The notes under the pieces are model-generated. The model was given only the letters and a program-made list of their open reading frames with translations, searched no databases and was not told where the DNA came from. Below, piece after piece: positions 10,015 through 40,900 of a DNA stretch of 64,000 bases; the stretch's first letter is position 1; each line of letters begins with the position of its first letter. The stretch covers positions 1 through 64,000 of the forward strand of contig NIVC01003802.1 of assembly GCA_002269645.1 (NCBI GenBank), written 5' to 3'. Origin of the DNA: Macrostomum lignano. Its lineage: Eukaryota. The position numbers and the translations under genes were made by a program.

Positions 10015-11709
10015 TTACACTGCATTCTCGCTATTCGCCGGAGCACCAGCTGGACCGCCGTCCCCGCTCCCGGCTGGACCCCGATGCCTGACGGTCGAGG
10101 CCGCAGACTGCAGGCTAGTCCCGCTGCCGTAGATGCTAGTTGGCAGGCGAGCTTTGACCAGACCGCACGTCAGCGCTCGAACAAATCGCGCCCTGAACAG
10201 CTTATTTTTCCAAACAAGAATTATCCAGTTGATTGACTGGTTAAACAGAAGCATGATTTGACCAACATCGCCAAGGTTAAGCACCGTGCGCAGCATGTTC
10301 TGGTCAGTGGTTGGGGAGAACACGGTCAGCTGCAGCACAATGTACTGGGCTATGCAGGGCGGCATGCCCGACAGAAAGTAGACCAAGGACAGGAACAAGA
10401 CCACTATTGACGGCCCTATCTCGTCGGATTCTTTATCTTTCTCTCCGCTGTTGGCCATGCTTTTTCGGTTGCGCAATATTTTTAACACTTTGCGCAACAG
10501 AAACAGGTTGACAATGCTGATGGCCAGCAGTTGCACCATCGGAGGTATCATGAACAGGGCATTGCGAATTATCGTCCAGATGCGTACACCTTGACCGAAA
10601 AATGGAACTGCCAGACAGGCAATCTTGTTGTCAAGGATGTACCAGCCGGTGAAGACAGGGACCGGAGCCACTAGTATTAGCGATATCAGCAGCACTACTA
10701 TTAAGGCCTTCCAGGCGGAACGGTTTGTTAAAGTTCGAAATCTGAAGTCAAAATTAGACGGTTACTGCACACAGGCCTCTATAGAGATTAGGACAAACGA
10801 AATGCTTTGCAAGTCAAAGTGTTTTAGGGAAGCTTGTACATTAATTACTACAGTACTTGATGCACGATATTACACGCAGACGTAGAACTATTCATATAAG
10901 TCAATAAAAAACTTAACTATGCAACTTACATTAGAGGCTGTTGGTATATATTTATTATTTCATCGTTTAAATATTTTAAACGAGGGTCGACCCACAGCTA
11001 GTTAGGGGCTATATAAGTACACACACGCACACACACACACACACACAGGTCGAATGCATATTCAGGTTAATTTAAGCTCGTTACAGTAATTGCATACACT
11101 CTGTGTCTCTATGACTGGCCCCTGACGAGTTGACTATTTCGGCAGGTGCCTGATCAATCCTAATTTAATGTGGCAGCTCTCTTACTTGAACGGATAATGG
11201 AGGGTGAGCACACGGTCCAGTGTCATCAGCAAGAACCAGTTCGCCGACAGTACGTGGAAGAAGTTGTGCACAAAACGAAACAATCGGCAGGCGAGATCAG
11301 ACACGTTGACCATGAAGAAACCGACAGTACCGCCGCTGATCCAGGGCAGGCCTTTGGCAACTATCTGCCAGCCCAGGCCCCAAGAGATGAGATTGCCACT
11401 ATCTGACACAGCAATCAGTGCCAGGTAAAGATTCTGGCGACATTTAAGCCTCTGCTCGGACAGCATCACATAAGTTGTCAGCGTGTTGCCAATAACGCCA
11501 AAGAAGACAATAACGGGCACAAAGAAGATGCCCAGAGCGCCGAGAACAGTGGCGCCGATGCAGAACGGTCGCTTGGTTGGGTCGCCGCTGCGACAGTCGC
11601 GAAGCAGATCGTCCAGAGCGTCGAGATAGCCGATGGTGGCAGTGTCTTGAAGAGAATCGTTCGCCGACATTTTCGATGCTGGAATGAGATGAAGCTCTGC
11701 AGGCTCCAT
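10015..11709 (-). CDS. Class A peptide-receptor-like GPCR, paralog of the 5277 gene, 2 exons (11709-11186, 10741-10015), about 416 aa
   Basis: Shares blocks with the 5277 gene (GLPWISGGTVG, FRFVHNFFH, LSANWFLLMT.DR, IACLAVP.FG). A phase-2 intron 11185-10742 (TTCAA|gtaaga...ttcag|A) gives HYPFK-FRTLTNRSAW. CDS length is 1251, a multiple of 3. Confidence 0.88.
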
Positions 11710-14854: not shown

Positions 14855-15929
14855 TCAGCCACTGGTTGATGACCTACTAGACTTAAAGGCCGTGAATTTG
14901 ATCACTCGCAAGTAAGATGCTCGGAACTCAGCATTTAATAGACCATAAACTATGGCGTTCATGCTGCTATTAAAAAATGACATCCACACCGAGTACTTGT
15001 GAAACATATTGGACAGGTGGATATCCATCTTTTCAGTGATCACTTGAACCAAATACGGCACCCAGCAGGCGTTAAACACCAGGAAAGCCACCATGATCGT
15101 AAAAATGGCCCTCCTCTCGTCCCTGCTCAATGTTGTATCGGCCGATTCACCCAAGTTAGCCTTGATCCGATAGAGTTTCCAGAAAATTGCTCCGTAAGCA
15201 AAGCAGGAGATGCACAGTGGCAGAAACACTCCGAATGCAGCTAGCATGAAGGTAGCCGAGAACACATACTTCTCGTCGTAGTTGAAGCACGCGAAGGCAT
15301 CGGCAAGGTAGGTAAAGTTATCCGTAGCTCCTTCTACGCCACTGTAGATAAACCAAATCACCCAAATCAGTAAAATTATTAGCAGCGTCGATCGACCCGT
15401 GAAAATTCTGTCATAAAGGTGACGCTTGATAACGAAGCAATATCTGAAAGGGAGATTTTTTGGAGTTTAGAAAGTCTACAGAGATAAAAGAATATTTTTG
15501 AAACAAATTTTCATCTAACCTATTCAGAGCAATCGCACAGAAGTTGCTGTTCGATATGCCAGTGCAAGCGAATGATACGAAAGCATTAAATATGCATTGC
15601 GCATCAGTGAATATGTTCTTATTAGAGATGCGAGCAGAGAGCACACACGGCAGGACATATCCGCTAACGAGCAGGTCGGCAGAGGCAATGCTCAGTATAA
15701 AATAGTATTGCGGCTTCTGCATTCGTTTTGTTGTCAGAATGCTAATGATCAGCAGCAGGTTTCCAATAACGCCAATAGCGATAAAGATCGATAAAACTAC
15801 GCAGTCGCCAATCTTGTCAGCTAAGACGTCCGGCATTGGACAGGCGAACTCATCTCTGTGGTGATCGTCCTCCTCCTCAATGCAGTCCCTTGGCGCCACC
15901 GTAGTGGAGGTTTCGTTGTCAGCCTCCAT
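14855..15929 (-). CDS. Melatonin-receptor-like class A GPCR, copy A, 2 exons (15929-15520, 15443-14855), 332 aa
   Basis: GNLL in TM1, ASADLLV in TM2, AIALNR|YCF (NRY motif) across a 76-bp phase-2 intron, CWVPY in TM6, and FNSSMNAIVYGLLNAEFR in TM7 (NAxxY). Family assignment rests on motifs only. Confidence 0.85.
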
Positions 15930-16505: not shown

Positions 16506-17578
16506 TCAGGCTCTTGTCGACGATGGTCTAGCCTTGAAGGCCTTGAATTTGATCACTCGCATGTAAGACGCGCGAAAGTCGGCATTTAGCAAACCATAAA
16601 CTATGGTGTTCATGCTGCTGTTAAAAAATGACATCCAGACCGAGTACTTGTGAAACATTTCTGTGAGATCGACTTCCATCTTTTCAGCTATAGCCTGAAC
16701 CAAATACGGCACCCAGCAGGAGTTAAACACCAGGAAAGCCACCATGATCGTAAAAATGGCCCTCCTTTCGTCTCTGCTCAATGTGGTTTCGATTGATTCA
16801 CCCAGGCTCGTCTTGATCCGATAGAGTTTCCAGAAAATTGCTCCGTAAGCAAAGCAGGAGATGCACAGCGGCAGAAGCACTCCGAATACAGCCAGCATGA
16901 AGGTAGCAGAGAACACGCTTTTCTCGTGGAAGTTGAAGCATACGAAGGCGTCAGTAAGGTAAATGTAGTTACCTGTTGCACCTTTCACAGCACTGTAGAT
17001 AAACCAAATTACCCAAATCAGTAAAGTTATAAGCAGCGTTGATCGGCCCGTAAAGATTCTGTTATAAATGTGACGCTTTATAACAAAGCAGCATCTGCGG
17101 GTAAGAAGCTTATGAATCTTAGAAACTCTAGGAATTAGAAAAAATACTGTGAAACAAAATTTTCACCTAACCTGTTCAGAGCAATCGCACAGAAGTTGCT
17201 GTTCGATACGCCAGTGCAAGCAATTGACACGAAAGCATTGAATATGCATTGCGCATCAGTGAATATGTTCTTATTAGAGATGCGAGCACAGAGCACACAC
17301 GGCAGGACATATCCGCTAACGAGCAGGTCGGCAGAAGCAATGCTCAGTATAAAATAGTATTGCGGCTTCTGCATTCGTTTTGTTGTCAGAATGCTAATGA
17401 TCAGCAGCAGGTTTCCAATAACGCCAATAGCGATAAAGATCGATAAAACTACGCAGTCGCCAATCTTGTCAGCTAAGACGTCCGGCATTGGACAGGCGAA
17501 CTCATCTCTGCTGTGCTCGTTCTCCCCGGTGCAGTCCCTCTGCGTCACCGTAGTGGAGGTTTCGTTGTCAGCCTCCAT
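16506..17578 (-). CDS. Melatonin-receptor-like class A GPCR, copy B, 2 exons (17578-17172, 17094-16506), 331 aa
   Basis: Tandem paralog of copy A with the same intron position (77 bp). Motifs read NRC and NTIVY. An in-frame upstream ATG at 17599 is possible. Confidence 0.85.
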
Positions 17579-17771
17579 GGTCTGCCGTTCTAATCTCATA
17601 AGTCTGATTTATGTGAGGACGGCAGTTTGCAATATTTATATGTTCTAAGCACAACAAACAGGCCGCAAGCCAATAGGGCCGTAGTTAAGGCGTTGGGGAC
17701 AGGCACAGCCGCAAATTATCGACCAATGGTAGAGTGCGTTGTTCCTATTATTCCTATCAATCCTATCAACT

Positions 17772-18141
17772 AACCAATCAACCAACCAACCAACCAACCA
17801 ACCAACCAACCAACCAACCAACCAACCAACCAACCAACCAACCAACCAACCAACCAACCAACCAACCAACCAACCAACCAACCAACCAAACAACCAACCA
17901 AACAACCAACCAAACAACCAACCAACCAACCAACCAACCAACCAACCAACCAACCAACCAACCAACCAACCAACCAACCAACCAACCAACCAACCAACCA
18001 ACCAACCAACCAACCAACCAACCAACCAAACAACCAACCAACCAACCAACCAACCAACCAACCAACCAAACAACCAACCAACCAACCAACCAAACAACCA
18101 ACCAACCAACCAACCAACCAACCAACCAACCAACCAACCAA
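17772..18141 (+). repeat. (ACCA)n microsatellite with AACA variants
   Basis: About 370 bp of nearly pure tetranucleotide repeat. Confidence 0.97.
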
Positions 18142-19395
18142 TCTCTACTTTTTTCTTATCTCATATATTATCTCGTCTTTTCTCTTCTCCTCTCTCCTCC
18201 TTGCTCTCTTATCTCATCTCTCCTCTCCACTTTTCTCTCTCATCTTTCCTCTATCCTCTCCTCTCTTTATTATCTCCTCTCTATTCTCTCTCCCCTCCTT
18301 TCACTCCCATCTCTCCTCGCTTCACTATTCTCTCCTCTTTTCTCTCTACTCTCTTCTCTCTCTACTCTCTTCTCTCTCTTCCCTTTCCTCTCTTCTCTTT
18401 CCTCCCTTTTCCCTCTCCCCTCTCTCCCTCTGCTCCCGCTTCTCTCTCCCTATTCTCTGGCCTATCTCTCCTCTCCTCTGTACTCATCTCTAAGTTGGTC
18501 TCTCCTTCCTCTTCTCCTCTTATTTTTCCTATCTTTTCTTTTCGCTCTCCTATCTTCTCTCTTCTCTACTCTCTTATATATCCTCTCTCCTTTCTACTCT
18601 CTTATCTATCGTCTCACCTCTCCCCCCTCTCCCCTCTTCTCCTATCTTATCTCTTCTTTCTCATTTCTCCTCTCCTCTCACCTCTCTCTCCTCTTCTCTC
18701 CTTTCTTCTCTCCTCTGTTCTCTCTCCCTTTTCTCTTCTATCTTCCATTTTCTCTCTTCTCTCCTTCTCCCTCCCCTCTTTCGCCCTTCTCCCCTCTCCT
18801 CTCGTTTCTCTCGCCCATCTTCTCTCTTTCTATCATCTCTCCCCTCTTCTTTCCCGTCTCTCACCTCGCTCAACTCTGCTCTCTTCTCTCTACTCTTTTC
18901 TTTCCTCTCCTCTCTCCTTCCTCTTCTCCTCTTCTTTTTCCCATCTTTTCTCTTCGCTCTCCTATCTTCTCTCTTACTCATTTCTCATCTCTCTCCTCTT
19001 CTCTCTATCTCTCCTCACTTCTATCTTCTCTCCCCTTCTATCTTTTCTCGCTTCGCATTTCTTGTCTCTCCTCTCCTCTGTTTGCTTATCTCTAATCTTT
19101 TGTTCCATCTTCTTTGAGGTAAGACATTCGCCAAAATTTTTGGCTGAAGATTAAAAGGAGAGAAGAGGGGAAAGAAGAGCTAGGGGAGATAGTTGAGAGA
19201 GGAGGGAAGAGTGGAGAGAGGAGAGAAAGGTGGGAGAGGAGGCGAAGAAGTGGGGAGAGAGGAGAGATGGGAAGAGTGTGAAGAGGAAAGAGGAGGGGGA
19301 AAGGAGAGGAGAGAGAGGAAACTGGGATAGAGGAGTGGGGACAGAAAGAGAAAAGAGTTGAGAGAAGAAGGGAGGGAGGAAGGTAGAGGAGGGGA
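18142..19395. repeat. Low-complexity polypyrimidine tract (18142-19100) followed by a polypurine tract (19153-19395)
   Basis: CT-rich on the + strand, then GA-rich. This explains the spurious Leu/Ser/Pro ORFs here. Confidence 0.93.
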
Positions 19396-20560: not shown

Positions 20561-21422
20561 TTGAGTTTTTGATTTACAGTATAGTAGAAAGCGTTATGAA
20601 CAAAAACTTGAGCAACTTGACCTGAAAATTTTGTTCGTTCGGTTATAAAGAATTCAGACTATATAGCAGCTGACAGTGAATGGAGAGCTAAAAAACTGAC
20701 AATTACTGACTTATCTAACCGGAATCCATTAATGAACCGAAAAATCACTGATCGTTGCTGCAAGCTACATTATAAATTGCTGCATCTCTATCGATTACCG
20801 TTGGGATTATAGCTCGGGAAACCATTCCGCTCCCATTTTTACAAAGACTAGCCAAGAGCTAGAATCAGTCCTGTGGACAAAAAATCGTTTCTATTTCTAC
20901 ATCTAAAACGATGTAGTAAAATGGGATAGGCAAATTCAATGCAAGTTCTAGTTAATTGTAAGACTTTTGACGCTTTGTGAATCAGATTTGAGCAACAAAT
21001 CGTTTACTCAGTGTTCCCGTAAAACAATTCTGAGAACGTCGCTGCAGAAATACGAATAAATATCCGTACTACAAACTGCAGTCAATAAAATAGATCGTAT
21101 TTGGAGAGTGCATTTCCATTTAGCATTTGGCTGTCTAGTCTATAAAAGCCTTATCTTCTAATTGATTGAAGGCCTACGCACCAATAAAGTACTTTCTGTA
21201 GACTGCGAGCAAAGCAAATAGATAAGCTCGTATTTTAGTTCTTTTTATTTTCTGCTATGGCTTTATTGGTGACAAAAGACTTTAATAGAATTTCTTGAAG
21301 TAGACAGAACCCTGCAACTAAACTAATAAATTAGTTACTATTATAATTACTAGTAGAAAGTTCCCATGCAAACATATGATAAGTTTGATAGTAGGAGAAT
21401 AATCTAACTTAGCATAGCAGTC

Positions 21423-23604
21423 TCAATCGCAGGTGACATTGGCGTTACGCGCCTGAGGCTGTGACTGCGGACGCTGAGCCATCGCCTCATGCAGCGCTGG
21501 CAGCGTCTGCCAGTCAATGAGCAGAGACAGATTGGCACCACCTGGCCACAGAGCGTCGAGCTGCAGCACCAACCTATTGTACAGCTCGGCCGCTAGCAGC
21601 TGGTCAGGCTCGGGATGCAATTCAAACAGCCATTCGTCTGCTGTGCTTAGCAAAAGCATTGCGGCAGTAGCGCAGTCCAGGCACCCTGAACTAGCATTGT
21701 CACAATTCTCGTCAGATGGAAATCCGTCCAGCGATCGGTGAAGAAGGCAGCGAAATTCTGCGAGTACATCGTCGCACGGACGACTGACGTAGCGCCAACA
21801 ACGTCTGGACCTGTCGTGACGAGTTGGTAGTACAATCTATAAACTATTTATAAGCCAGGGACTACTCAATACTCGGGACGGGAAACGACAATATTTGGAG
21901 GCCGATCTATTAATAACTTAGTCCTCGAAAAGCATCGTTTGGATTAGGTTTTTACCACAGCCACTAACCCGCTGACTGCAAGGTAGAACATATCGAAGTA
22001 ATGCTTTTCGAGGACTAAGTTATTAATCGAGCGGCCTCCAAATATTGTCCTTTCCGGTCCCGATCGTATTGAGTAGTCCCTGTTATAAGCATTATGCTAG
22101 TCAGGCTGAGTGAAGCTGACTAGATCATTTTACGGTCTAATAATAAAGCTACATGTAGAAAGCAAGGCTACCATTTTTTCCGCTACAGAAATTCATATAC
22201 AATAAATAAAAATGTACTACTGACGGGAAACGAAGCGATTTAAGCAGAAAAATCTTAAAGAGGACTACTTAAAAGTTAGATCTTGCTACCAGTATTGAAA
22301 GTAGGCTATTCTTTTGTCAAACTAGTCAACATGGATGCTGTAAGGTATGAATTCAAGAAAGGAGCCGTTCTACCTGTGTCTGAGCACAAATACACCGGCA
22401 GTCTGCAGCTGGGAATAGTTGCTCATGTCATTACAACCGCTTTCCGACTTGCTCATTTCCGACTGTAGAATTCTCGCCAGGGTATTGGCCAGGCAATCCA
22501 AGTTTGCTACAGAGTCGTCAAAAAATTCCAGCCCACCCGTCTCCGAGCGCCACCAGCCACTATGTTGTCGCACGTCTCGTCGGTACTTCAGTCTCTCTTT
22601 GGTTTGCGGCTTTGCGGCCAACTCAGCGGCCATGGCATGGAGGCGATGGCAAGCGTCGTAGTCAGCCTGATGTAACTCGCTGCTACGCTGTCGCAGCTGC
22701 TGGCAAAGCCGGCTAAACTCGCGAACGGCCTCATCGCACCGGTACAACAGGCCTGACTCGTCCGCCTCAAAGGCAATCCGACGCACGTCGTCAAACTGCA
22801 GATCGGCAAGACCCAATCGTCTAGCTTCCATCGCCGTTGCAGCCTCCTCGACAACAGCTAAGTGACTTCGACTCGCGCCGTTCTCTGTGGATCGGCACCA
22901 GTCAAGCTCCCGTAGCTCCTTCAAACAGACAAGGCTCTGATTCAGACTCGAGTTCAGACCACGAGGCCATAGGCAACCTAGACGAAGCATCAGTTCATTT
23001 TGCAAAGTCTGTCGCTCCGCCTCAGAGTCGTCAGCTGCCACGAGGGTCAGCTGCCAGTCGGTCTGACGAGTCAACAGAATCGCTGCACTGACCACTGCAT
23101 CAGATTCGTCAAGGCGGCTTTGATCGCTAGTCGAGCTGTCAAGTCCGTCGAAAGCCAGCCAGAGGAGACGCCGCAGCGCCCCAATAAGTTGGTTCTCGTC
23201 GCGACCGACGTAGGCAAATGCCGGCAGCCGAGCATGACGCAAAGCGAAAACACCCGGCCCGTGAAGGCGTCGCTTTGCCTCCGTAGCCGCTTCTGATAGC
23301 CCGGCCGAAACGTGCGCTCCAGATTGGCATCGGCTATCTTGGCCTCGGACGGACGGCCCCACCAGCCCGAGCGCTGGCGAATCACCTTGGCGAACGCACG
23401 TCTTTCGTCAGTCGGCGTCTGATTTAGCGCTGACGTGTGTAGCTGCGCCACCCGGACGAGATTGCGCCAATCGTCCTGCTGGAATTGCTGCAAAGGTTTG
23501 CCGCTTTGGATTCGCTTCTCCAGCTGGTTGTAGACCTCCTGAATGCCCGGTTCCAGGGCTGCCGTGCCTGGAATCAATAGTGCCTTGTTCGTTGATTCGT
23601 TCAT
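21423..23604 (-). CDS. Orphan protein with two ~270-aa internal repeats, each with a degenerate GIY-YIG-like module; exons 23604-22374 (apparent frameshift near 23261-23316) and 21810-21423
   Basis: Repeat motifs: RQRSGWW/RQHSGWW; GVFALRH-x7-YVGR/GVFVLRH-x7-YVSR; LWPRGLNSSL/LWPGGANLSL. The phase-2 intron 22373-21811 (CACAG|gtagaa...gacag|G) restores exact colinearity of the repeats. It could be a pseudogene or an assembly error. Confidence 0.65.
21856..22082. mobile_element. hAT-type MITE, 227 bp, with ~80-bp imperfect TIRs and 8-bp TSD TTATAAGC
   Basis: Left end CAGGGACTACTCAATAC and right end GTATTGAGTAGTCCCTG. TTATAAGC occurs at both 21848-21855 and 22083-22090. Confidence 0.9.
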
Positions 23605-25618
23605 AGTCTCCGTAGCTATAAGTAAGTAACGAGTAAAATTGAAGCTCTAGAGCAAAGCTAAGTCAAATGGAACAGGTCTGAGAAATCTTAATTAATAAAC
23701 TCTGTGAGTTTGGGCTTTAAAGCCAATTCTCTCTTTTCATTTAGCGAACCTAATGCTCCTCTTATGCTGGTCTATTGTGCCTTGCTTACTAAAGACTTTT
23801 CTCTCCTACCTTTGCCTCCACTCCTCATCTCTCTCTCCGACAGCTTTCTCTCCATTATAGTGTCTGCTTTCATCGATTTGCTCTGACGCACAGACGGTTT
23901 CTGTCAGCAGCAAGATGTGCGGAATAATATAGTACCTGTCTTTCCTATACCAGTCTCCGGCCCAGGTTCTTATAATAGCCGACTGGCAAAACAAGTTAAA
24001 GTTAGCATACGAGCGTAGAGTATAACAGACTAGTTGGAACACTATTATGCACTGGCATGAAAACATTCTTTACTCGGAAGCGCAACGTCGCCCAGTCGCC
24101 GTTACTTTAAATACAGCAGAACGAAAACAAAAACTCCAAATAAAAGTACTCTAAAGACTCAATTTCAACTGTAATGCAAAGTTTTTCCTAAAACTATAAT
24201 TTATAAATACGCGAATAGATGAATGTTATAGTAAAGGTACTTAATGCTAAACGGCAACATTCTACAAATAAATAACTGGCTACTGTTGAAGATAAAAGTA
24301 AAACTGATGGGTCGGCTCACAAATGCGGTTTCATCATTTCATTATGAAGGCTCAACATTTTTATTGCATCAGAGATGCATCGGAGTCAGTTGTTTGTCGA
24401 TTAGTTGTCAGTAAATTTTGTGGTCGAGTTGCAGTTTGAGCTGATCTGATTGTGCTTGTCGAGCGCCGATCGTCACCATTGCCTTTTATTTGTGGAATTA
24501 TTAGTTAGTAGTTTAGTAATTATTAATACTGTGCCTCTGCCAAATTATTGTATAGCTTTTATTGTAACTAGTAGTAGTCGTTAGTTTTAATTAGTCGGTC
24601 TCGAAAGAGGCCGTTCGGGTAACAAATTATACTACCATTGCAACCTAATTTAACCGATGAATCCCACCGTGATGGCTAGTAGGGATACAAGGCTAGAAAT
24701 TCTGCCCCAGTGGATTAGGAACTGGTAGCCTAAAAAAGCCTTCAAAGTTTTACACTCCATCTAGTTCTCGCTGTACTCTACCGGTACCTGAAAGTTAATC
24801 GCAAGCCTAAGATCCCCGATCCCATAAATATACTGCTAGATACTGGCCAGCAAGTAAATTCAAAGCCAAATTTAAACAGCGCTTTCTATTTGAACTTCAG
24901 CGTATTTTGGAAGCGACAAGTCAAAGAACAGAACCATCGCAAAAAGATGCTGTGAAAATTTAAAAAGGAAAAGAAAAGACTTTATTTGAGGGAATAACCT
25001 GGGAAATGACGATTTCATAACTCGTACAAACTTAATGCTCTCATATGGAAGCGCGGTAGCCGATTAAACGATTTGAAGACACGTTATTGAAAACATACAG
25101 TCAAGTTATTATGCCCTGTTGCTGGTCTTTCAATGTTCAAGCGATTAGCACGTAGTGGCTCTTTTTAGTACTAATAGTAATCTTTCAAGAGTAATCGCTT
25201 GGCCACTGTTGGGTCAGGCAATCATGGAATTTTTTTTTTAGTTCGGTAGCTCTTTTTGCTTTAAAGTCGGCGCCCTCTGCTGCAGAAACTGCTTCTGTCA
25301 ATATTGGCAATTGCCTATCAGCTGTTGAATCATTAATGCACAGATTTCTTTTTAAGCTGTTGGCTGCCTACTAAAAGCTGCAATCTTGAGGCTGCATGCA
25401 GAATACCGGAGCAAACTGTTGTTGCGTTTCTCTATTAATAGGAGTTATAAGTAGATGCACTTTGATCCAACGCGGCGCAGGGAGGTGCGATAAAAGTCAG
25501 CCCTGATAGTCGATATGGTTAGTCGAACGGCCCAGTATGTGAGTTGGGTTTTACCGTTTCTTAATGCTCAAAACTTTTTGGTCTATTCAGTAGGTTTAAT
25601 CAATCAATTTTCGCAGGA

Positions 25619-26657: not shown

Positions 26658-26889
<232 letters not shown>

Positions 26890-27504: not shown

Positions 27505-28809
27505 ATGTGGGTATCTGTATTTATAAGAGTTGCCAGCAGCATCTCAAGAGCGCACTCCAAGTTAGGCGGAAAATTGAAGGAAAGGAATTTCTTAGAAATG
27601 TCACTGAAAGTCGCGAACGACTCTGAGTCGGAATCGTCCGTTTGCGAGGCCTATTGTCAGGCGAATACAATTTTGTGGAGCGTTCTGCTTCCGCCACTCT
27701 TAGCCGTTGGCCTGATAGGCAACTTGCTCATTGTGCTTGTGTTCAGTACTAGTACCAAACGACGGCGAAGGAAGCCGGTCCTCTGCATCACCATGGTGAC
27801 GCTGGCCTGCGCCGATCTGCTCGTGTTCCTGTTCCCCATCACGCGGCACTGGCTGAGACACGCCAAGCTCTACATCAGCTTTGACGTGCAAACTTTGGGC
27901 ACAGGTGTCTGCAAGACGCACGAGTTTCTCGTCTACTTCTCGTTGATGTTCAGCATCTGGATGGTGGTGCTGGTGTCCGGAGAGAGATTCACCATCATCT
28001 GTTTCCCCTTGCGTCGATCGCGACTCCTGACGCCGCGTCGAATCGTCGCTGTGATTGTTGCTATCATAACTGTCTCTGCACTGCTCAATGTGCATTTCTT
28101 TTGGACTCGCGAATTCGTCTGGAACCACCAACTGAACCGAATGAGCTGTCAGAATGCGCGTTCGGGTCTGGACGCGTTCATTTCTAAATCGGTTCACCCC
28201 TTCGTAGATATGACCTTCACCGCTGGGCTGCCGCTCCTGCTATTGGTCATCTTCACTGGGGCGATCGCGCACAGACTTTACCAAAGAAGTCGCCAGCTTA
28301 AAACTCTGACAGCCGGGCTCAGCAACTGCTCGCCAGCTGGACGGCAGCATCGCCTGCTCACGCCAACCACGCGAATGGTGCTGCCTGTGCCGCTGTTGTT
28401 CATCCCGCTGGCGATGCCCGTGAAGTTCTGGCTAGTTGTGCACCACGGCAAAGGCATTCCGGGCTCCGTCCAGCCGGGCACGCCCGAGTACCACAGTGTC
28501 CGGCTGGGCTGGTCCGGCCTTCTGTTCTTGCAGTTCTGCAACTTCGCCTGCAACTTCTTTATTTACAGTCTGATGTCCGCCGACTTTCGCGCCGACTTGG
28601 CCAGACTTTTGTGCGGCCGGTGCCGTCGCCGGGTCTGGTGTCGCGGGGGTGAGCAGTCGGCCTCGACCAGATCGGCGCCGCCAACCGCAGCCGCAGCAGT
28701 AGACGCCGCCGATGTCGTTGTGAACGACAGGAAGATGGTGCTAGCAAGCAACTTTGATGACGCGAGCTCGGTCTACCAGATGCAGCTCCGGTCTTGCAGA
28801 CGATGTTAA
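27505..28809 (+). CDS. Intronless class A neuropeptide-receptor-like GPCR (likely start ATG 27598)
   Basis: GLIGNLL, LACADL, C in ECL1, SGERF (DRY variant), seven TM segments, and NFACNFFIYSLMSADFR in TM7/H8. Confidence 0.9.
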   Translation: MWVSVFIRVASSISRAHSKLGGKLKERNFLEMSLKVANDSESESSVCEAYCQANTILWSVLLPPLLAVGLIGNLLIVLVFSTSTKRRRRKPVLCITMVTLACADLLVFLFPITRHWLRHAKLYISFDVQTLGTGVCKTHEFLVYFSLMFSIWMVVLVSGERFTIICFPLRRSRLLTPRRIVAVIVAIITVSALLNVHFFWTREFVWNHQLNRMSCQNARSGLDAFISKSVHPFVDMTFTAGLPLLLLVIFTGAIAHRLYQRSRQLKTLTAGLSNCSPAGRQHRLLTPTTRMVLPVPLLFIPLAMPVKFWLVVHHGKGIPGSVQPGTPEYHSVRLGWSGLLFLQFCNFACNFFIYSLMSADFRADLARLLCGRCRRRVWCRGGEQSASTRSAPPTAAAAVDAADVVVNDRKMVLASNFDDASSVYQMQLRSCRRC

Positions 28810-34900: not shown

Positions 34901-37900
34901 CTATCTAGATTTGAATTTTCAACAATTAAAAAATGATATCGAGAATTTCAACTAGAGGCCTTGATATTCGTTGAAAGACCCGATGAGAGACCCGATGATG
35001 GATCCCATGATGGACCCGATGATGGAACCAATGAGAGACCCGATGAGAGATCCCATGATGGACCCGATGATGGAACCAATGAGAGACCCGATGAGAGATC
35101 CCATGATGGACCCGATGATGGAACCAATGAGAGACCCGATGAGAGACCCGATGATGGATCCCATGATGGACCCGATGATGGAACCAATGAGAGACCCGAT
35201 GAGAGATCCCATGATGGACCCGATGATGGAACCAATGAGAGACCCGATGAGAGATCCCATGATGGACCCGATGATGGAACCAATGAGAGACCCGATGAGA
35301 GACCGATGAGAGACCCATGAGAGACCGATGAGAGACCCGATGAGAGACCGATGAGAGACCCGATGAGAGACCGATGAGAGACCCGATGAGAGACCCGGTG
35401 AGAGACCCGATGAGAGACCCGATGAGAGACCGATGAGAGACCGATGAGAGAACCGATGAGAGACCGATGAGAGACCCGATGAGAGACCCGATGAGAGACC
35501 GATGAGAGACCGATGAGAGAACCGATGAGAGACCCGATGAGAGACCGATGAGAGACCCGATGAGGGACCCGATGAGAGAACCGATGAGAGACCCGATGAG
35601 AGACCCGATGAGAGACCCGATGAGAGACCGATGAGAGACCCGATGAGAGACCCGATGAGAGACCCGATGAGAGAACCGATGATGCACCCGATGATGGACC
35701 CTTGGGAAATGGACCCGATTACGAGTATGGACCCGATGAGAGACCCGATGACAGACCCGATGAGGGAAATGATGACAGACCCCAGAAAAATACTAAAAGC
35801 CAGCAATTGGCCTATATACATGAATGGGTTTGGGTCATCGTTATATAAAATTTGTCGGATAAATTTCCACAGTCAATAGAAGGATATTTAGCTCGTAATA
35901 AATTTGTTGCCTTTTCTTGGGTGCTTTTCACTATCTATTCATTCATTCTTCGACTTTTTTACGTATCTATAACAATTTGAAAGTTTTTTTGGACACGAGA
36001 AAACTGTACAAAACTTTAACAGACGTCAATTGACAGGGATGATGAGGTATCTGAATCAAATTTGAATTATCTTGCAGTATAAAAATTAATAACTCTGTTA
36101 ACTCTACATACTAAGGTGTAACTATATTCGATGTGCTTCTCTTAATGTACTGTTGTGAAAACTGTCAATCAACCTTCAAATTTTAATTACTGTGCTTCAA
36201 CTCTAAGAAAACGTACAACCTACAGGCAAATGCACAGAAAGAACTTTACTTTAACTATTTTACTTGTTAATTGAAGGTTAAATATTTGGTTCATCATTAA
36301 AACAAAAACTTCACACTCAACAGCGTACGAGACAGGCTGAGGCATCGACCAATGCAAAACTGGTATAAAGTCAATTTACAATTTTATGCTATGTCTACCT
36401 GTAAGCTTTTGTTGTAGTTGTTTGGACGTTTTTTGTTATACCGCGATGACCTTTTGTGACGATCAACTAAAATGTAACCGGCTTTTGACTGGCTCTGCTG
36501 CAATGTATTGATACTAAAATAACTAAATTGATTCTTTATTTAGCCCATCCTAACTATTTGAATCCGTGAGCAGAACAAGGTCCAATGTTCAGCAGTTGAA
36601 AAAAATACAAGCAATACAAAATACAGTCCAGTTTAGACCTAAAATACCGTTTTATAAAGTTTTTGTTGTTGTTTGTATGATTAACAATTATTGTTGCTTA
36701 CGAATCCCTTGAGTTGTAAACTTTAATGCGTTCGACTTGTGCCCCCGCTTTGCTGATAGGCAAAGTACTTGCAGTTTATCACATATTTTTAATTCTATAG
36801 TTTTTTGTTCACGCAGTCGCTTTGTACAATGTTGAACTGCTGCTTTTTAAAGCTTACAAAGCCTACTCTCCTTACCTTGTCGTTTTAGAAGAATGAAGAC
36901 GAGTCGGAGAGTCTTGCGTTGAAGCCGCAGGTAAGCTGAGTCGATGTCTTCTGTTTTGGTTGAACCCGATTTCACTGCTTGATGTCTTTTGTTTCCTCAA
37001 AAGTCGATACGATGCACTTATAATCCATCGTTAATTGACTTGATCTGAACGTGAATTATATTCTTTACCGATTTTCCTTTAAAGTTTTTCCTAGATGTTA
37101 CTTTATGTAATAGCTGTCGTTAATTTACTGATATACAGGCATATGGCAGAGAGACACTAAGATAATAAAGCAGAGCGACCGACAGACTTAAAGACACACA
37201 GACAGACAGACACTTTAAGATAATAAGACAGAGAGACCGACAGATCCAAACCTAAGACGAGGGCCGTAGTACAGTGGTCCAGCGCGGCGCTCTGGTGTGC
37301 CAGCAGCCCAGGTTCGATTCCAAGTGCAGTCACATTAATTTGAGGCTAAATTGGAATCTTGGCTTGGCTCTTCTCGTGCAATTAATAGCCTTGAGAGCCA
37401 ACCCCCCAAGGCACAGTGAGGTGTACATGCCTAACGATTAATCAAGTTAGGGCCGCTGTACACTCCTGTGTGAGTGTGTGCCTGTGCGTATGACTGCGTA
37501 CGTATCCGCGCGCTTGTGTGCCTGCTCAGGGGAGTCGGCAGAATGGGCAGCAATGCCTCTCGCCGGTTATGTGACAATGTCGCTTAAAGTGCACCTGAGT
37601 GCACACAGCCCCTGTCTCTAATCGAAAAGATTCAAAGACAGACAGACAGACATAAGACACGTAGACAGAAAGACAAGACCGATAGATACAATATATGTGA
37701 ATGGATGTATAACGCATAACGCATAACGCATATATACATCAACATGTTGCCTGATTACAATGCCCGATGACCTGCTACTACATGTAAAAAGCTTCTTTGC
37801 TAGCTTCTCTTCCACACTATCCATAATATTCAATTACCTTTGCAAACATCTACTGTTCCATTTGCCAGTATTTAGCAGTTTTGGAATCGAACGCCGAATA

Positions 37901-40900
37901 CGATTCCGATAGCGATGTAAGTGCTCCGATCCCAGTGTAGCGAATTTTTAATAACTCTTTGAGGTCATTCATGCGCTATTTCGAGCCGTAGTGATGCTCA
38001 TCCTCCGGCTTCTATGTTTCGTGTGTATTCGAAACATGGAAGTAAAGTAAACAAAAATTCGCCTGACGCATGGTAACTGCAGTAATACATAATCACACTG
38101 CCTCGAGCAACTTTGTTTAAATATGCTTATCTTAAATTTGCGGTATTGAAATGAATAAACTATCTATTGTCTTGATATTGCATGGTATCTCTCAACATGA
38201 TAACACTAACGGCTATGGCTACTTTTAGGATATTGCACTCTTAGTTGCAAAGGAACGCGTTAAAAATTAGTGGAAAAGTTTAACAGCATTATGATTAGGT
38301 GCACGATAAAATCCAAAAAATGGTGCTTTTCATGATCAAAAACTGATTTTGCTGTTTAAGCTTCGGTGTCAGCCTTTGATAAAGTCGGTAATAAAGTTAA
38401 TGCACGGATCATTTTTAAGTTAATGTGAAACTTTGCCAAACTGTTGCTGTATCTAGCTGGGCCCTACTTTTCATCGTAGGACGAACGGGACGCGGTCTAC
38501 ATCCTGCTGAGACATGGAGCCGATTTTACTCAAAAAGATTTCTACGGTTGCACACCTTTGCACTACGCCGCTATGAAGGGCAACCTCGTGGCCAGCAGGT
38601 GCCTACTGCACTTTGAGTCGATGCGACAGAAAGGACGAGTGATCAGCGCCGACAGGGTGGAATGCGTCTACAGCACTCGAGTGCCCATCTGGAGGGTGAG
38701 CGCGTTTCAAATGCGACCAAATCTTCCCATAGTTTTTTTCCGGAGTTTCCCCCAGGAACTGTAAAAATTACCTAGCACACTGAGTACAATGACAAAATCT
38801 TAGTTGACTATAAGATCTCATCGACCTTTTCCACGGCGTCAAATAAAGCGACGATGAAATCGAACCCGGGGGTAAAGCTTCGGACTGCATTCGGGTCCCT
38901 CTCTCGGGCTCCCTCCCTGGCTTCTGGTCGACAGTTCTAAGTAGCGGTTTGGTCGGGTCGGTTGTTAACATCTCAAAATGCCCAAAAGTGAATTATACTT
39001 TCGTTTTTACTGCTTGTCAAACAGGTTTTTTCTACTTAGCTTGGACCACACCTGTGACCTTGGACGTCACACGTTTAATGCTTTAGAACGTAGATATTAT
39101 TGTACGAACCACATCCTAATCTTGATAATATTTTGCAGGCAATCTCCTATAGACTTTTTCTCATATGTGACTTGAACTTTTATATTTCCCTCGCGTCACA
39201 GATAACCGACAACGAAGACATGACAGCTCTTCATTTAGCCTGCGCACACAGCGAAGTTCTCATTGTGAAGATGCTCCTCGAGATGGAGACGAACGACAAA
39301 GACTACCTAGACATGGTGGAGAACAGCGGCTGCACCGCTCTTCACCTGGCCAGTGCCGAAGGTAACGAAGAAATCTGCAGCTACTTGCTGCACTCCGCCG
39401 AGCTCGAAGGCGAAGGCTTCCTGAAGCGGTACATCAACCGCAAGGATATGGAAAACAACACCTGTCTGCACAGCGCGGTGCAGAATGAATGCATCGACGT
39501 TGCGGAGGTCCTGCTCAAGAAGGGTAAGCATTGAAAAAGCAAAACCTCTACTGTTCAGCATAAAATCGAAAAATGAAATCTCATCACTACAAAAATGACA
39601 TTCAGGTGCCTTCGTGAACGCTTGCAACACGGGTCATGAGACGCCGCTGCATCTCGCTGCTCGCACTGGCAGCACGGCCATGGTTGAGCTGCTCATCCGT
39701 CACGGCGCCAGCCTAAACGCTTTGGACACCGATCGACAGACGGCGTTGCACAAGGCGGCGAACTTCAATCAGAATGACCTGCTGAAGTACCTGCTGGAAA
39801 TTGACAGCTCCGTGATCGACGCCAAAGACAGGGAGGAGAACACACCCCTCCTTCTGGCCAGCTGCCAGCAGGACGATCCCGGATGCGTCCAGATTCTGCT
39901 GGAGAAAGGAGCCAATCCGCTGTGCACGGACGGCCAGGATCGATCCGCCCTGTACCTGGCAGCCCAGTGGCACAACACCAAAGTGCTTAAAGCTCTATTG
40001 GACAATCCGGTGGTCACTGAGAATCGCGTCATTGACGAAGCGGATGTCAACAACAATACGCCGTTGCATGTTGCCTGCGAGAATGGTATGCCGCTGCAAT
40101 TGCCTTACTATGCTTCATTTTATTTAACGCCATCGACCTGCTAATAAGATAGTTGTTTAACACTTTATGTACTTTTGGATTGACTAAGTAGCCATTAATG
40201 AATCAATGCGCAATGCGAGCTACATTGATAGGAGCTTTATACGAGTGTATATTGTCTTCGTATCTTTCTTCACTAGCACAATCAATTAGAGAACCTGAAA
40301 CCGATGGAGGTCCATTCCCTTCTTCATGGTTAATTTGAAAGCAGCTTGCTCCATACGTGATGATCGAAGCACTGTTTTTAGAAATTAGTGTTTGATTGGT
40401 TTGTTTTTTTACAGTCAACAATCGCTCTAGTATTTGAGCTTTGCGCCCAATAGTTGAAAAGCTACGAGTGTTACTAAACAATCGCAGGCTATCTTGACGT
40501 AGTCGAGCTGTTACTGCGCTACAAGGCCAAATACGATGACAAAAACGAGGACGAAGAGACGCCAATTCATCTGGCCGCCAAAGCCGGCCACGTGCCCATC
40601 GTCCGTCACCTGCTACGCCTCAGCCGCAACCTGGCGCACGACGAGGACGAAGATTCGAACACGCCGCTGCACCTGGCGGCACTGGCTGGCCACTCCAAGA
40701 TCTGCCAAGTGCTCATCGAAGAGGGCAAAGCCGACGTTGAGGCCAGGAACTCGCGCGGCTGGACTGCGATGGACTGCGCCGCGTCCAAGGGCTTCACCAA
40801 GGTGGCCCAGGTGCTGTTGGAGAACGACTCGCCAATCGATCCGGCGGACAAGTCGAACGTCACCCCGCTTTTCCTCGCCTGTCAGGGTGGGCACCAGGAG

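What the first reader, a model, noticed from the sequence alone, without database searches (positions are those of the whole stretch)
21423..23604. Orphan gene with two tandem, apparently catalytically dead GIY-YIG-like modules: possible domesticated Penelope-type endonuclease
Seen: joining three ORF pieces gives a ~540-aa protein of two ~270-aa repeats. Each has a helical region ending P...ER..(F/Y)...RQxSGWW, then GVF(A/V)LRH-x7-YV(G/S)R, (R/C)LL....DG, AA(I/M)LL, W and L.N.L.L.L..LWPxGxNxSL. Established: GIY-YIG nucleases have G(I/V)Y-x9-11-Y(I/V)G, a catalytic Arg, and an E...P.G.N end; LxxLxPxGLN is typical of Penelope-like element endonucleases. Inference: both repeats keep the spacing and PxGxN, but have Phe for the first Tyr and lack Arg and Glu at the expected positions (Q or Y at the Glu site). 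No RT is adjacent, and the gene has a spliceosomal intron and an upstream acceptor-like site. This fits a host-co-opted nucleic-acid-binding pseudo-nuclease with an unnamed SGWW domain.
Basis: partly seen in the sequence, partly recalled or inferred. Interest (0 to 1): 0.8.

Follow-up and report, generated by a model that had tools for sequence, protein, structure and literature searches.

The report
Disrupted copy of tandem GIY-YIG-fold gene
This flatworm (Macrostomum lignano) locus is a transcribed but frameshifted duplicate of a host gene whose protein carries two GIY-YIG nuclease-fold modules with an altered active site; the family has not been described and was found only in flatworms, ribbon worms and annelids.

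Summary

- **Organism:** the window is Macrostomum lignano contig NIVC01003802.1.
- **Junctions:** pieces 2 and 3 are joined by a real GT-AG intron (22373-21811), which the GenBank model PAA49730.1 also uses. Pieces 1 and 2 are separated by a frameshift, a 19-nt deletion relative to the syntenic homeolog, so this copy is disrupted.
- **Not an orphan:** an exhaustive HMMER search of 1.84 billion proteins found 7 relatives. The named ones are from Tubulanus, Owenia and Helobdella; all five examined in their contigs are intronless, and three have two units.
- **Fold:** an AlphaFold model of the C-terminal half of a unit (pLDDT 88) matches GIY-YIG nucleases. I-TevI gives TM 0.71, UvrC also matches, and there are hundreds of phage GIY-YIG hits. 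No Pfam or PDB sequence match exists.
- **Active site:** profile alignment puts non-conserved residues at the catalytic Arg and Glu columns. His, Asn-Asp/Glu and WPxGxN are conserved instead.
- **Penelope origin is not supported:** there is no RT, CCHH motif or hammerhead ribozyme, and the gene is not multicopy.

Verdict: a new, divergent GIY-YIG-fold family, probably not a canonical nuclease. Its function is unknown.

The parts
23310..23604 (-). Exon 1, part before the frameshift. It runs from start codon ATG 23604-23602 through the unit-1 helical domain, ending ...RQRSGWWG (23379-23356) ...ANLERT (23328-23311).
   Evidence: Translation; motif coordinates; 98-99% identical to the homeolog L004.
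23309..23310 (-). Site of a 19-nt deletion relative to the homeolog (L004 has TGATTCGATCGGCTCTTGA here, encoding ..LIRSALDS..). The deletion shifts the frame between the SGWW helix and the first GIY-like domain.
   Evidence: Pairwise DNA alignment. The same out-of-frame read-through appears in the UniRef model P0009. The assembly was Pilon-polished with Illumina and RNA-seq data (PMC5730564).
22374..23309 (-). Exon 1, part after the frameshift (the frame of ORF 23362-22370). It holds the unit-1 GIY-YIG-fold domain: GPGVFALRH 23260-23234, YVG 23218-23198, LWPRGLNSSL 22975-22943. It also holds the unit-2 helical domain (from 22897; RQHSGWW 22570-22547) and the first strand of the unit-2 GIY-like domain (TAGVFVLRH 22402-22376). 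The annotated protein PAA49730.1 starts at Met 22990.
   Evidence: AlphaFold model of residues from this stretch, pLDDT 88.2; Foldseek results.
21811..22373 (-). Spliceosomal intron, 563 nt, with donor CAG|GTAGAA and acceptor CACGACAG|G. It splits the unit-2 GIY-like domain between strand 1 and strand 2. The five homolog genes examined in their contigs lack an intron.
   Evidence: Splice sites read. The junction reproduces the deposited protein exactly. Homolog genes (Tubulanus, Owenia and three unidentified) are single ORFs.
21848..22090 (.). MITE-like hairpin element inside the intron. It spans 21856-22082 with perfect 17-bp terminal inverted repeats (CAGGGACTACTCAATAC), flanked by an 8-bp target-site duplication TTATAAGC (21848-21855 and 22083-22090).
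   Evidence: It is present at the same site in the homeolog. The 8-bp duplication suggests a hAT-type origin; that is inference.
21423..21810 (-). Exon 2, the rest of the unit-2 GIY-YIG-fold domain: SRRCWRYVSR 21809-21780, EFRCLLHRSLDG 21758-21723, LYNRLVL 21584-21564, LWPGGANLSL 21554-21522. Stop codon TGA is at 21425-21423.
   Evidence: unit-2 AlphaFold model.
23605..23619 (-). Acceptor-like site TTACTTACTTATAG|CTACGGAGACT, with its AG 11 nt upstream of the ATG. It is a candidate spliced-leader trans-splice or 5'-UTR intron acceptor.
   Evidence: Sequence; identical in the homeolog. 38.8% of M. lignano genes are trans-spliced (PMC5730564). Its use is inferred, not shown.
21244..21267 (-). 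Two AATAAA polyadenylation-signal hexamers (21267-21262 and 21249-21244), 156-181 nt downstream of the stop codon.
   Evidence: Read from the sequence. Function inferred.

Best explanation
**Shown**
- The locus is one of two syntenic homeologous copies, about 98% identical, of a transcribed Macrostomum lignano host gene.
- The gene belongs to an unnamed protein family found here only in Spiralia: a flatworm, a nemertean and annelids.
- The family protein is built from one or two tandem units. Each unit is a ~110-130-aa helical domain ending in an invariant SGWW, followed by a ~125-aa domain that AlphaFold predicts, with high confidence, to have the GIY-YIG nuclease fold.
- The two-unit architecture predates the annelid-nemertean split.
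- The window copy carries a 19-nt frameshifting deletion in unit 1. It can therefore only make truncated products, for example the annotated 334-aa protein containing unit 2.

**Inferred**
- The GIY-YIG active site is remodelled across the whole family. The first Tyr is mostly Phe, and the canonical Arg and Glu columns are not conserved.
- A His on strand 1, an Asn-Asp/Glu pair on helix 3 and WPxGxN are invariant or nearly so.
- Canonical one-metal GIY-YIG catalysis is therefore unlikely.
- The most likely role is a two-lobed, single-chain binding or scaffold module (a pseudo-nuclease). It uses the conserved remodelled pocket to hold a nucleic-acid or other phosphate-bearing ligand.
- The SGWW helical domain probably packs on the nuclease fold as a family-specific accessory.
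For: - **Identity of the window and the annotated product:**
- **Internal repeat:** E=1e-14.
- **Family size:** only 8 proteins in 1.84 billion representatives. They include Tubulanus XP_074643470.1, Owenia CAH1783701.1 and Helobdella XP_009020121.1.
- **Host context of homologs:** single-copy and intronless, next to ordinary host genes such as fasciclin, a zinc-finger gene, GrpE and TOP3B.
- **Age of the duplication:** unit-1 sequences cluster with unit-1 and unit-2 with unit-2 across species.
- **Structure models:** unit model pLDDT 76.6, pTM 0.79; domain model pLDDT 88.2.
- **Fold matches:** the PDB top 10 are all GIY-YIG, with I-TevI 1ln0_A at TM 0.71, rmsd 3.2 A, probability 0.99, plus UvrC; Slx1, HIGLE and PD-T4-3 come lower. 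BFVD gives 553 hits, and the named ones among the 50 listed are almost all GIY-YIG or intron homing endonucleases, down to E=5.8e-4.
- **Profile alignment:** hhalign against 13 real phage I-TevI-like domains covers the whole domain, 89 columns, E=6.4e-5, probability 64%.
- **Column table of catalytic positions:**
- **Invariant residues:**
- **Frameshift:**
- **Selection:** dN/dS between homeologs is 0.24 (11 non-synonymous, 14 synonymous changes; binomial P=6e-4).
- **Transcription:** the GenBank annotation derives from RNA-seq-guided transcripts and excludes repeat-overlapping ones (PMC5730564).
- **Charge:** the family's GIY-like domains are neutral to acidic (net -6 to +1), against a median of +4 for bona fide domains.
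Against: - No sequence-level match to Pfam GIY-YIG, PHROGs or PDB sequences. The fold assignment therefore rests on a prediction made from a 13-row alignment.
- The residue mapping comes from a 64%-probability profile alignment and could be off by 1-2 residues. In that case the family Arg (present in both window repeats) and the Asn-Asp/Glu pair would sit at the catalytic positions, and the protein could be an active nuclease.
- No binding or activity data exist.
- The homeolog also carries a lesion in the assembly: it has lost the GVFVLRH strand of unit 2. The gene may therefore be decaying in M. lignano altogether.
Confidence: 0.6

Rival explanations
1. The family is an active nuclease with a variant GIY-YIG site. 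The invariant strand-1 His replaces the GIY tyrosine as general base. The helix-3 Asn-Asp/Glu pair binds the metal. The Arg two residues after the canonical column stabilises the transition state. Two modules in one chain would give a pseudo-dimer able to cut both strands, or a nickase with one active and one inactive lobe.
For: - His, Asn, Asp/Glu (10 of 13 modules), Pro-x-Gly-x-Asn are conserved across phyla.
- Unit-2 modules of the three two-unit homologs all keep Tyr2, Arg, Asp and Asn, while their unit-1 modules have Gln for Arg.
- Some modules have fully canonical Y...Y...R-x3-Y/H patterns, for example unit 2 of P0002.
- On a beta strand, the His lies on the same face as the GIY aromatic residue (i, i+4 spacing in strand 11-17).
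Against: - The leech single-unit proteins lack Tyr2 and Arg altogether (L/I and S/A) yet keep the family motifs.
- The first Tyr is Phe in 8 of 12 modules.
- The domains are not basic.
- Window unit 2 has Arg in place of the Asp/Glu.
Confidence: 0.25
2. One reading: the gene is a host-co-opted endonuclease domain of a Penelope-like retroelement.
For: - PLE endonucleases are GIY-YIG and occur in invertebrates.
- The published clustering places PLE endonucleases near I-TevI-like and chlorovirus homing endonucleases (PMC1564403; PMC8557442). These are also the best structural matches here.
Against: - The CCHH motif with two Cys inside the GIY-YIG core is universal in canonical EN+ PLEs and Naiads (PMC8557442). 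It is absent here: at most one non-conserved Cys lies between GVF and YVG.
- The R, H and E residues are not conserved.
- There is no RT ORF within about 8 kb on one side and 4 kb on the other.
- There is no hammerhead ribozyme or any other Rfam match in the window.
- The gene is single-copy and syntenic in all the genomes examined.
- The helical SGWW domain has no counterpart described in PLEs.
Confidence: 0.06
3. The frameshift is an assembly artefact, and the window copy is an intact 545-aa gene equivalent to its homeolog.
For: - The assembly is PacBio-based and highly redundant (PMC5730564).
- The two published assemblies used the same PacBio data, so their agreement is not independent.
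Against: - A clean 19-nt gap is not a typical PacBio homopolymer error.
- The assembly was polished with Illumina and RNA-seq reads.
- Both deposited gene models avoid or jump the site.
Confidence: 0.1
4. The GIY-YIG resemblance is a chance or over-fitted prediction, and the domain has an unrelated alpha/beta fold.
For: - No sequence-database profile recognises it.
- PDB Foldseek E-values are only 0.03-0.1.
- The alignment used for prediction is shallow, with 13 rows.
Against: - The secondary-structure order beta-beta-alpha-alpha-beta-alpha matches GIY-YIG.
- All ten top PDB hits, and nearly all the named hits among the 50 BFVD hits listed, belong to one superfamily.
- An independent sequence-profile alignment spans the whole domain in register with GIY, YIG and the terminal Asn.
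Confidence: 0.05

Closest known systems
I-TevI-type GIY-YIG homing endonuclease catalytic domain (PDB 1LN0/1MK0; phage Seg and intron endonucleases; chlorovirus PBCV-1-like group)
   Same: - Best structural match: TM 0.67-0.71, rmsd 3.2-4.8 A, plus hundreds of BFVD hits.
- Same beta-beta-alpha-alpha-beta-alpha order.
- G-[VI]-[YF] and [YF]-V-G strands at canonical spacing.
- Terminal G-x-N aligned with GYN.
   Different: - No significant sequence similarity by HMMER.
- The R27 and E75 columns are not conserved, and the first Tyr is usually Phe.
- There is no NUMOD or helix-turn-helix DNA-binding tail.
- A family-specific N-terminal helical SGWW domain is present.
- Two modules sit in one chain.
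- It is a nuclear host gene of animals, not an intron or intergenic selfish gene.
UvrC N-terminal GIY-YIG domain (PDB 1YCZ, 1YD6)
   Same: Second-best structural match, TM 0.57-0.59, probability 0.92-0.98. It shares the 'xxPxxN' ending after helix 3 (RPKYN versus WPxGLN).
   Different: UvrC keeps Y19, Y29, R39, Y43, E76 and N88 (positions verified). The family keeps only the Asn and, partly, the second Tyr. The domain context is different.
Penelope-like element GIY-YIG endonuclease (cd10442)
   Same: GIY-YIG superfamily, present in invertebrate genomes.
   Different: The locus lacks the RT, the CCHH and CX2-5CxxC motifs, the R/H/E residues, hammerhead ribozymes and multiple copies (definition from PMC8557442).
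Eukaryotic host GIY-YIG proteins (SLX1; ANKLE1/LEM-3, COG3680 group)
   Same: Host-encoded GIY-YIG fold proteins of animals. Slx1 appears among weaker Foldseek hits (probability 0.06-0.18).
   Different: SLX1 lacks the terminal Asn and has a RING finger; ANKLE1 has ankyrin and LEM domains (PMC1564403). Neither has tandem modules or the SGWW domain. Both are catalytically canonical.

Membership tests
GIY-YIG nuclease superfamily | ~100-aa alpha/beta fold with three-stranded sheet, order beta1-beta2-alpha1-alpha2-beta3-alpha3 | tested here: met
   AlphaFold domain model, pLDDT 88.2, has strands 11-17, 24-29 and 77-83 and helices 33-46, 60-70 and 88-102. Foldseek top hits are I-TevI and UvrC, TM 0.57-0.71. 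BFVD GIY-YIG endonucleases score probability 1.00. This is a prediction, not an experimental structure.
GIY-YIG nuclease superfamily | 'GIY' and 'YIG' motifs on strands 1 and 2, 10-11 residues apart | tested here: met
   The window has GVF-x11-YVG (unit 1) and GVF-x11-YVS (unit 2). Across the family it is G[VIMA][FY] ... [YFLIV]V. The motifs align with I-TevI Y6 and Y17. The first Tyr is Phe in both window units.
GIY-YIG nuclease superfamily | Catalytic Arg on helix 1 (I-TevI R27, UvrC R39) | tested here: inconclusive
   The hhalign column for R27 holds Ala (unit 1) and Glu (unit 2) and is not conserved in the family. An Arg/Gln column lies 2 residues later and is Arg in both window units. An alignment shift cannot be excluded without coordinates.
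GIY-YIG nuclease superfamily | Metal-binding Glu on helix 3 (I-TevI E75, UvrC E76) | tested here: not met
   The E75 column holds Gln (unit 1) and Tyr (unit 2) and is variable in the family. An invariant Asn at +1 and Asp/Glu at +2 (Glu in unit 1, Arg in unit 2) might substitute. That alignment region has only moderate confidence.
GIY-YIG nuclease superfamily | Conserved C-terminal Asn (I-TevI N90) | tested here: met
   The Asn of WPxGxN is invariant in all 13 modules and aligns with N90.
GIY-YIG nuclease superfamily | Significant match to a curated sequence model (Pfam PF01541 and relatives) | tested here: not met
   No GIY-YIG Pfam hit at E<=10 for the window protein, any unit or the full-length homologs scanned. 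No PDB sequence or PHROGs hit.
GIY-YIG nuclease superfamily | Metal-dependent phosphodiester cleavage | not testable with these tools
   Needs a biochemical assay.
Penelope-like element endonuclease | Encoded in one ORF with, or next to, a PLE reverse transcriptase | tested here: not met
   No ORF of 130 aa or more other than this gene lies between 19154 and 27505. The neighbours are a rhodopsin-type GPCR and an ankyrin/TRP channel gene. The same holds at the homeolog and in Tubulanus and Owenia.
Penelope-like element endonuclease | [quoted passage not shown] | tested here: not met
   Between GVF and YVG there is no Cys in unit 1 and one in unit 2, and none is conserved in the family.
Penelope-like element endonuclease | Conserved R, H, E, N catalytic residues | tested here: not met
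   Only N is conserved.
Penelope-like element endonuclease | Repetitive, dispersed copies with terminal repeats and hammerhead ribozyme motifs | tested here: not met
   There are two copies in collinear homeologous contigs, 97-98% identical over 22 kb. Each homolog was seen on one genomic contig. No Rfam hit, including hammerheads, occurs in the window.
SGWW + GIY-YIG-fold family of Spiralia (defined here) | Helical domain ending in SGWW(G), then G[VI][FY]xxxH, DW, N[DE], LWPxGxN | tested here: met
   Both window units carry all of these motifs, except that unit 2 has NR instead of N[DE]. phmmer E-values to the homologs range from 4e-28 to 3e-6.

The most novel reading that the evidence does not exclude
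The family could be a spiralian-specific, single-chain pseudo-dimeric nuclease. In this reading an ancient homing-endonuclease-like GIY-YIG domain, possibly of viral origin, was captured by the host before annelids, nemerteans and flatworms diverged and was fused to a new helical SGWW domain. It was then duplicated in tandem and rewired to a His/Asn/Asp catalytic site, giving a new catalytic variant of the GIY-YIG fold with a host function such as defence or genome maintenance.
Probability: 0.2. Interest if true: 0.7.

Novelty: new variant of a known kind. Interest (0 to 1): 0.45.

Why it matters
GIY-YIG is a small, well-studied nuclease superfamily with few host-encoded animal members (SLX1, ANKLE1). 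This finding adds a family that sequence profiles do not see. Its features are:
- restricted, as far as found here, to a flatworm, a nemertean and annelids (all Spiralia)
- built as two tandem modules, each with a new accessory domain
- canonical catalytic residues replaced by a different conserved set

If the family is inactive, it is a clear example of a pseudo-nuclease kept for hundreds of millions of years. If it is active, it is a new catalytic solution on an old fold.

For M. lignano genomics, the locus also illustrates copy-specific decay of homeologs in the hidden-polyploid DV1 line. It shows that the deposited models for this gene (a 334-aa truncated protein, and a 537-aa model that jumps the frameshift) are misleading.

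Tried and rejected
- **The search for homologous proteins:** it timed out with the joined protein and with alignments A1 and A2. Only the P0001 query ran, which found the homeolog.
- **The search for related loci:** A degenerate DNA pattern for LWPxGLN or SGWWG was considered but not run, because about 24 bits of information would give mostly chance hits in the metagenome collection.
- **Sequence searches against Pfam, PDB sequences and PHROGs:** nothing relevant. The weak Terminase_7, volvatoxin and DUF1351 hits are chance.
- **Foldseek with the whole 264-aa unit:** diluted by the helical half. UvrC was the only coherent family, at E about 1, so the search was repeated with the domain alone.
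- **hhalign against single I-TevI or UvrC sequences:** not significant, probability 0.4-3.8%. The MAFFT alignment of I-TevI with UvrC misaligned E75/E76 and was discarded. It was replaced by a 13-sequence alignment of real phage domains.
- **Expression data:** a search for the gene IDs in papers and in the supplements of PMC5730564 found nothing.
- **Literature searches for a prior description:** the terms GIY-YIG + flatworm and GIY-YIG + pseudonuclease found none.
- **The UniRef name 'CHAT domain-containing protein':** tested against Pfam and not supported.
- **Helix-start counting:** I first placed the family Arg on R27 by counting from helix starts. I dropped this as unverifiable in favour of the hhalign mapping, and left the point open.
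Full report
**Where the window comes from.** An exact look-up places the annotated product on Macrostomum lignano contig NIVC01003802.1 (assembly GCA_002269645.1, Mlig_3_7), and the record coordinates equal the window coordinates. The rest of the window carries ordinary animal genes: an LRR protein, several rhodopsin-type GPCRs, and an ankyrin-repeat/ion-transport (TRPA-like) channel gene. It also carries many simple tandem repeats.

**Checking the observation.**
- On the minus strand, frame 1 runs from ATG 23604. A second frame holds the 330-aa ORF 23362-22370. A third holds the last 130 aa, ending at TGA 21425-21423.
- Joined, these give about 539 aa. The two halves align by BLASTP over ~199 residues at 26% identity, E=1e-14.
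- The join between pieces 2 and 3 is a GT-AG intron of 563 nt (22373-21811; donor CAG|GTAGAA, acceptor CACGACAG|G).
- Splicing restores GVFVLRH-RSRRCWR-YVSR, which has the same seven-residue spacing as GVFALRH-ARLPAFA-YVGR in unit 1. The deposited protein PAA49730.1 (P0001, 334 aa) is 100% identical to residues 206-539 of my model across this junction.
- According to Wudarski et al. 2017, the GenBank annotation of this assembly comes from a genome-guided RNA-seq transcriptome from which repeat-overlapping transcripts were removed (PMC5730564). The model therefore implies transcription and use of this intron. This is inference from the method; I could not see the reads.

**The frameshift.**
- The join between pieces 1 and 2 is not an intron. 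A second M. lignano protein, BOX15_Mlig022171g1 (P0010, 538 aa, 97% identical), lies on contig NIVC01003318.1.
- The two contigs are collinear over about 22 kb, mostly at 95-98% identity, with the same GPCR neighbour. This fits the duplicated large chromosomes of the DV1 line (PMC5730564).
- DNA alignment shows that the window copy lacks 19 nt present in the homeolog (TGATTCGATCGGCTCTTGA, encoding ...LIRSALDS...) between window 23310 and 23309. This shifts the frame in the linker between SGWW and the first GIY-like domain.
- The UniRef model A0A1I8GAS5 (P0009) reads straight through in the wrong frame and then jumps back. The deletion is therefore also in the older assembly, although both assemblies used the same PacBio data.
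- A clean 19-nt gap in a Pilon-polished assembly is unlikely to be an error. I rate an artefact at about 0.1.

**The homeolog is not perfect either.**
- In the homeolog, the end of exon 1 (GVFVLRH) and the 5' half of the intron are replaced by a 108-nt inverted copy (94% identical) of the start of exon 2. The inversion is centred on the intron's hairpin element.
- Its YVS tyrosine is Cys.
- Between the two copies there are 14 synonymous and 11 non-synonymous changes. This gives dN/dS = 0.24, with binomial P = 6e-4 against neutrality. The protein was therefore under constraint for most of the time since the duplication, and the lesions are recent or copy-specific.

**Relatives.**
- An exhaustive phmmer search of 1.84 billion cluster representatives found only eight proteins.
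- Besides the window's own product, these are Tubulanus polymorphus XP_074643470.1 (Nemertea, 550 aa), Owenia fusiformis CAH1783701.1 (Annelida, 831 aa), Helobdella robusta XP_009020121.1 (leech, 471 aa), and four unnamed sequences from a JGI metagenome, Logan assemblies and ENA.
- Three homologs have two units, with the same ~272-275-aa period (270-286 aa in the window protein).
- In a neighbour-joining tree of units, the unit-1 sequences of these three cluster together, as do the unit-2 sequences. The tandem duplication therefore predates the annelid-nemertean split. The two fast-evolving M. lignano units are not resolved.
- The homolog genes are single ORFs without introns. Those on longer contigs or chromosomes sit next to ordinary host genes.
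- The gene is therefore neither an orphan nor a multicopy element.
- The unit alignment gives these invariant residues: S, W, W of SGWW; G of GVF; a His four residues later; the W of 'DW'; an Asn on the last long helix; and W, P, G, N of LWPxGxN.

**Fold.**
- No sequence method recognises the protein. Pfam, PDB sequences (single sequence and profile) and PHROGs give nothing relevant.
- AlphaFold2 on the 12-row unit alignment gives a compact unit (pLDDT 76.6, pTM 0.79). It has a helical N-terminal half and a confident (>90) C-terminal alpha/beta domain.
- Modelling the unit-1 domain alone from 13 rows gives pLDDT 88.2 and the order beta-beta-alpha-alpha-beta-alpha.
- Foldseek against the PDB returns, as its ten best hits, only GIY-YIG nuclease domains. 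These are I-TevI (1ln0_A: TM 0.71 on the target, rmsd 3.2 A, probability 0.99) and UvrC (TM 0.57-0.59). Slx1, HIGLE and the GIY-YIG enzyme PD-T4-3 appear further down.
- Against BFVD there are 553 hits, and the named ones among the 50 listed are almost all GIY-YIG, Seg or group I intron endonucleases of phages and chloroviruses (E down to 5.8e-4, probability 1.00).
- I then fetched twelve real I-TevI-like domains from phage genomes. I also verified my I-TevI and UvrC sequences against PDB entries, whose point mutants confirm the numbering of R27, E75, Y19, Y29, Y43 and N88.
- hhalign of the family profile against this alignment covers the whole domain: 89 columns, E=6.4e-5, probability 64%.
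The fold is GIY-YIG, with about 0.9 confidence.

**Active site.** In the hhalign mapping:

| I-TevI position | What the family has | Window unit 1 / unit 2 |
|---|---|---|
| Y6 | Phe in 8 of 12 modules, Tyr in 4 | Phe / Phe |
| N10 | invariant His | His / His |
| Y17 | Y/F, or L/I/V in the three single-unit proteins (P0006, P0007, P0008) | Tyr / Tyr |
| R27 | not conserved (A/E/S/T/Q...) | Ala / Glu |
| N90 | invariant Asn | Asn / Asn |

- Two residues after the R27 column there is an Arg. It is present in both window units and in the unit-2 modules of all two-unit homologs. It is Gln in their unit-1 modules and Ser/Ala in the two proteins P0006 and P0007 (the latter from the leech Helobdella).
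- One and two residues after the E75 column there is an Asn (12 of 13 modules, and all complete ones) and an Asp/Glu (10 of 13 modules). Window unit 1 has Glu there and unit 2 has Arg.
- At 13% identity a one- or two-residue register error is possible, and I had no access to the model coordinates. 'Catalytically dead' is therefore plausible but not shown.
- Points favouring a non-canonical, probably non-catalytic role: the residues essential in I-TevI and UvrC are not the conserved ones; the two related single-unit proteins (Helobdella and P0006) lack Arg and Tyr2 but keep the family motifs; and the domains are neutral to acidic (net -6 to +1), against a median of +4 in the real nuclease domains.
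- Points favouring a rewired active enzyme: a polar His/Asn/Asp set is conserved across phyla, and unit-2-type modules are consistently more canonical than unit-1-type modules.

**Penelope hypothesis.**
- Craig et al. [quoted passage not shown] They also keep R, H, E and N, and the endonuclease is fused to the RT (PMC8557442).
- Here there is no conserved Cys between the two strands, and only N is kept. No RT-sized ORF lies nearby, Rfam finds no hammerhead or other RNA, and the copies are syntenic homeologs.
- The best structural neighbours are homing endonucleases and UvrC. Dunin-Horkawicz et al. 2006 and Craig et al. 2021 note that PLE endonucleases are themselves nearest to homing endonucleases. 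A remote common origin cannot be excluded, but nothing specific points to PLEs (PMC1564403).

**Best reading.** This is a host gene family of Spiralia with one or two [helical SGWW domain + GIY-YIG-fold domain] units.
- The nuclease fold is retained but its canonical catalytic set has been replaced.
- I consider a two-lobed binding or scaffold pseudo-nuclease the most likely function (about 0.55-0.6) and a variant active nuclease the main rival (about 0.25).
- The window copy itself is disrupted. At most it encodes the unit-1 helical domain plus an out-of-frame tail, or the annotated Met206 protein containing unit 2.
- I found no earlier description of the family in the searchable literature.

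Noticed in passing
window 21848-22090 (inside the intron): A 227-bp hairpin element with perfect 17-bp terminal inverted repeats (CAGGGACTACTCAATAC). The inner arms are 89% complementary over 72 nt, and an 8-bp target-site duplication TTATAAGC flanks the element, so it looks like a hAT-type MITE. It is present at the same site in the homeolog, so the insertion predates the duplication. No other copy is in the window.
   Followed up: partly
L004 (NIVC01003318.1) 11233-11340 versus 11556-11663: In the homeolog, the end of exon 1 and the 5' half of the intron are replaced by a 108-nt inverted copy (94% identical; several of the differences are A-to-G) of the start of exon 2. This forms a large palindrome centred on the MITE hairpin. 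It could be a real template-switch rearrangement or an assembly artefact. The deposited gene model crosses it with a non-GT-AG junction.
   Followed up: partly
P0009 = UniRef100_A0A1I8GAS5: UniRef names this M. lignano protein 'CHAT domain-containing protein', but no CHAT or other Pfam domain is detectable even at E<=10. The model also reads about 75 residues in the wrong frame across the 19-nt deletion and then jumps back.
   Followed up: yes
window 14855-15929 and 16506-17599 (minus); 5277-6733 (plus) and 10015-11709 (minus); 27505-28809 (plus): A cluster of rhodopsin-type GPCR genes. It includes a recent tandem pair (about 88% identical at the DNA level) and an inverted pair, each gene split by one intron.
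   Followed up: no
window 39100-43634 (plus): A multi-exon ankyrin-repeat plus ion-transport gene, resembling a TRPA-type channel. It is annotated as a 1404-aa Ank protein in the record.
   Followed up: no
window 17767-18141, 26658-26888, 34972-35782, 45821-46568, 58101-58413, 58783-60117, 60466-61339: Long simple and minisatellite arrays: (CAAC)n, (TCTG)n, and 12-, 20-, 28- and 34-nt units. They create long spurious ORFs (for example 17734-19154 and 34926-35821), which are not genes.
   Followed up: partly
window 62737-63396 (minus): A 219-aa ORF whose sequence (…NRGVSLMSCTANLFNWLLLDRL…) looks to me like a degraded non-LTR retrotransposon RT fragment. It has no Pfam hit at E<=0.001 and lies 40 kb from the finding, so it is irrelevant to it.
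   Followed up: no
P0008 (ENA, 203 aa): This homolog begins with MCIRDR, which is the translation of the Nextera adapter sequence. Its N-terminus is therefore an adapter artefact and the protein is a fragment (the adapter identification is from my own knowledge).
   Followed up: no
homolog genes L002 8001-9653, L003 8001-10496, L005 5001-5987: The five homologs examined in their contigs (Tubulanus, Owenia and three unidentified sequences) are intronless single-exon genes inside intron-rich animal genomes. Only the M. lignano gene has an intron, and it lies inside the second GIY-like domain. Intronless status may hint at origin by retroposition or horizontal acquisition.
   Followed up: partly
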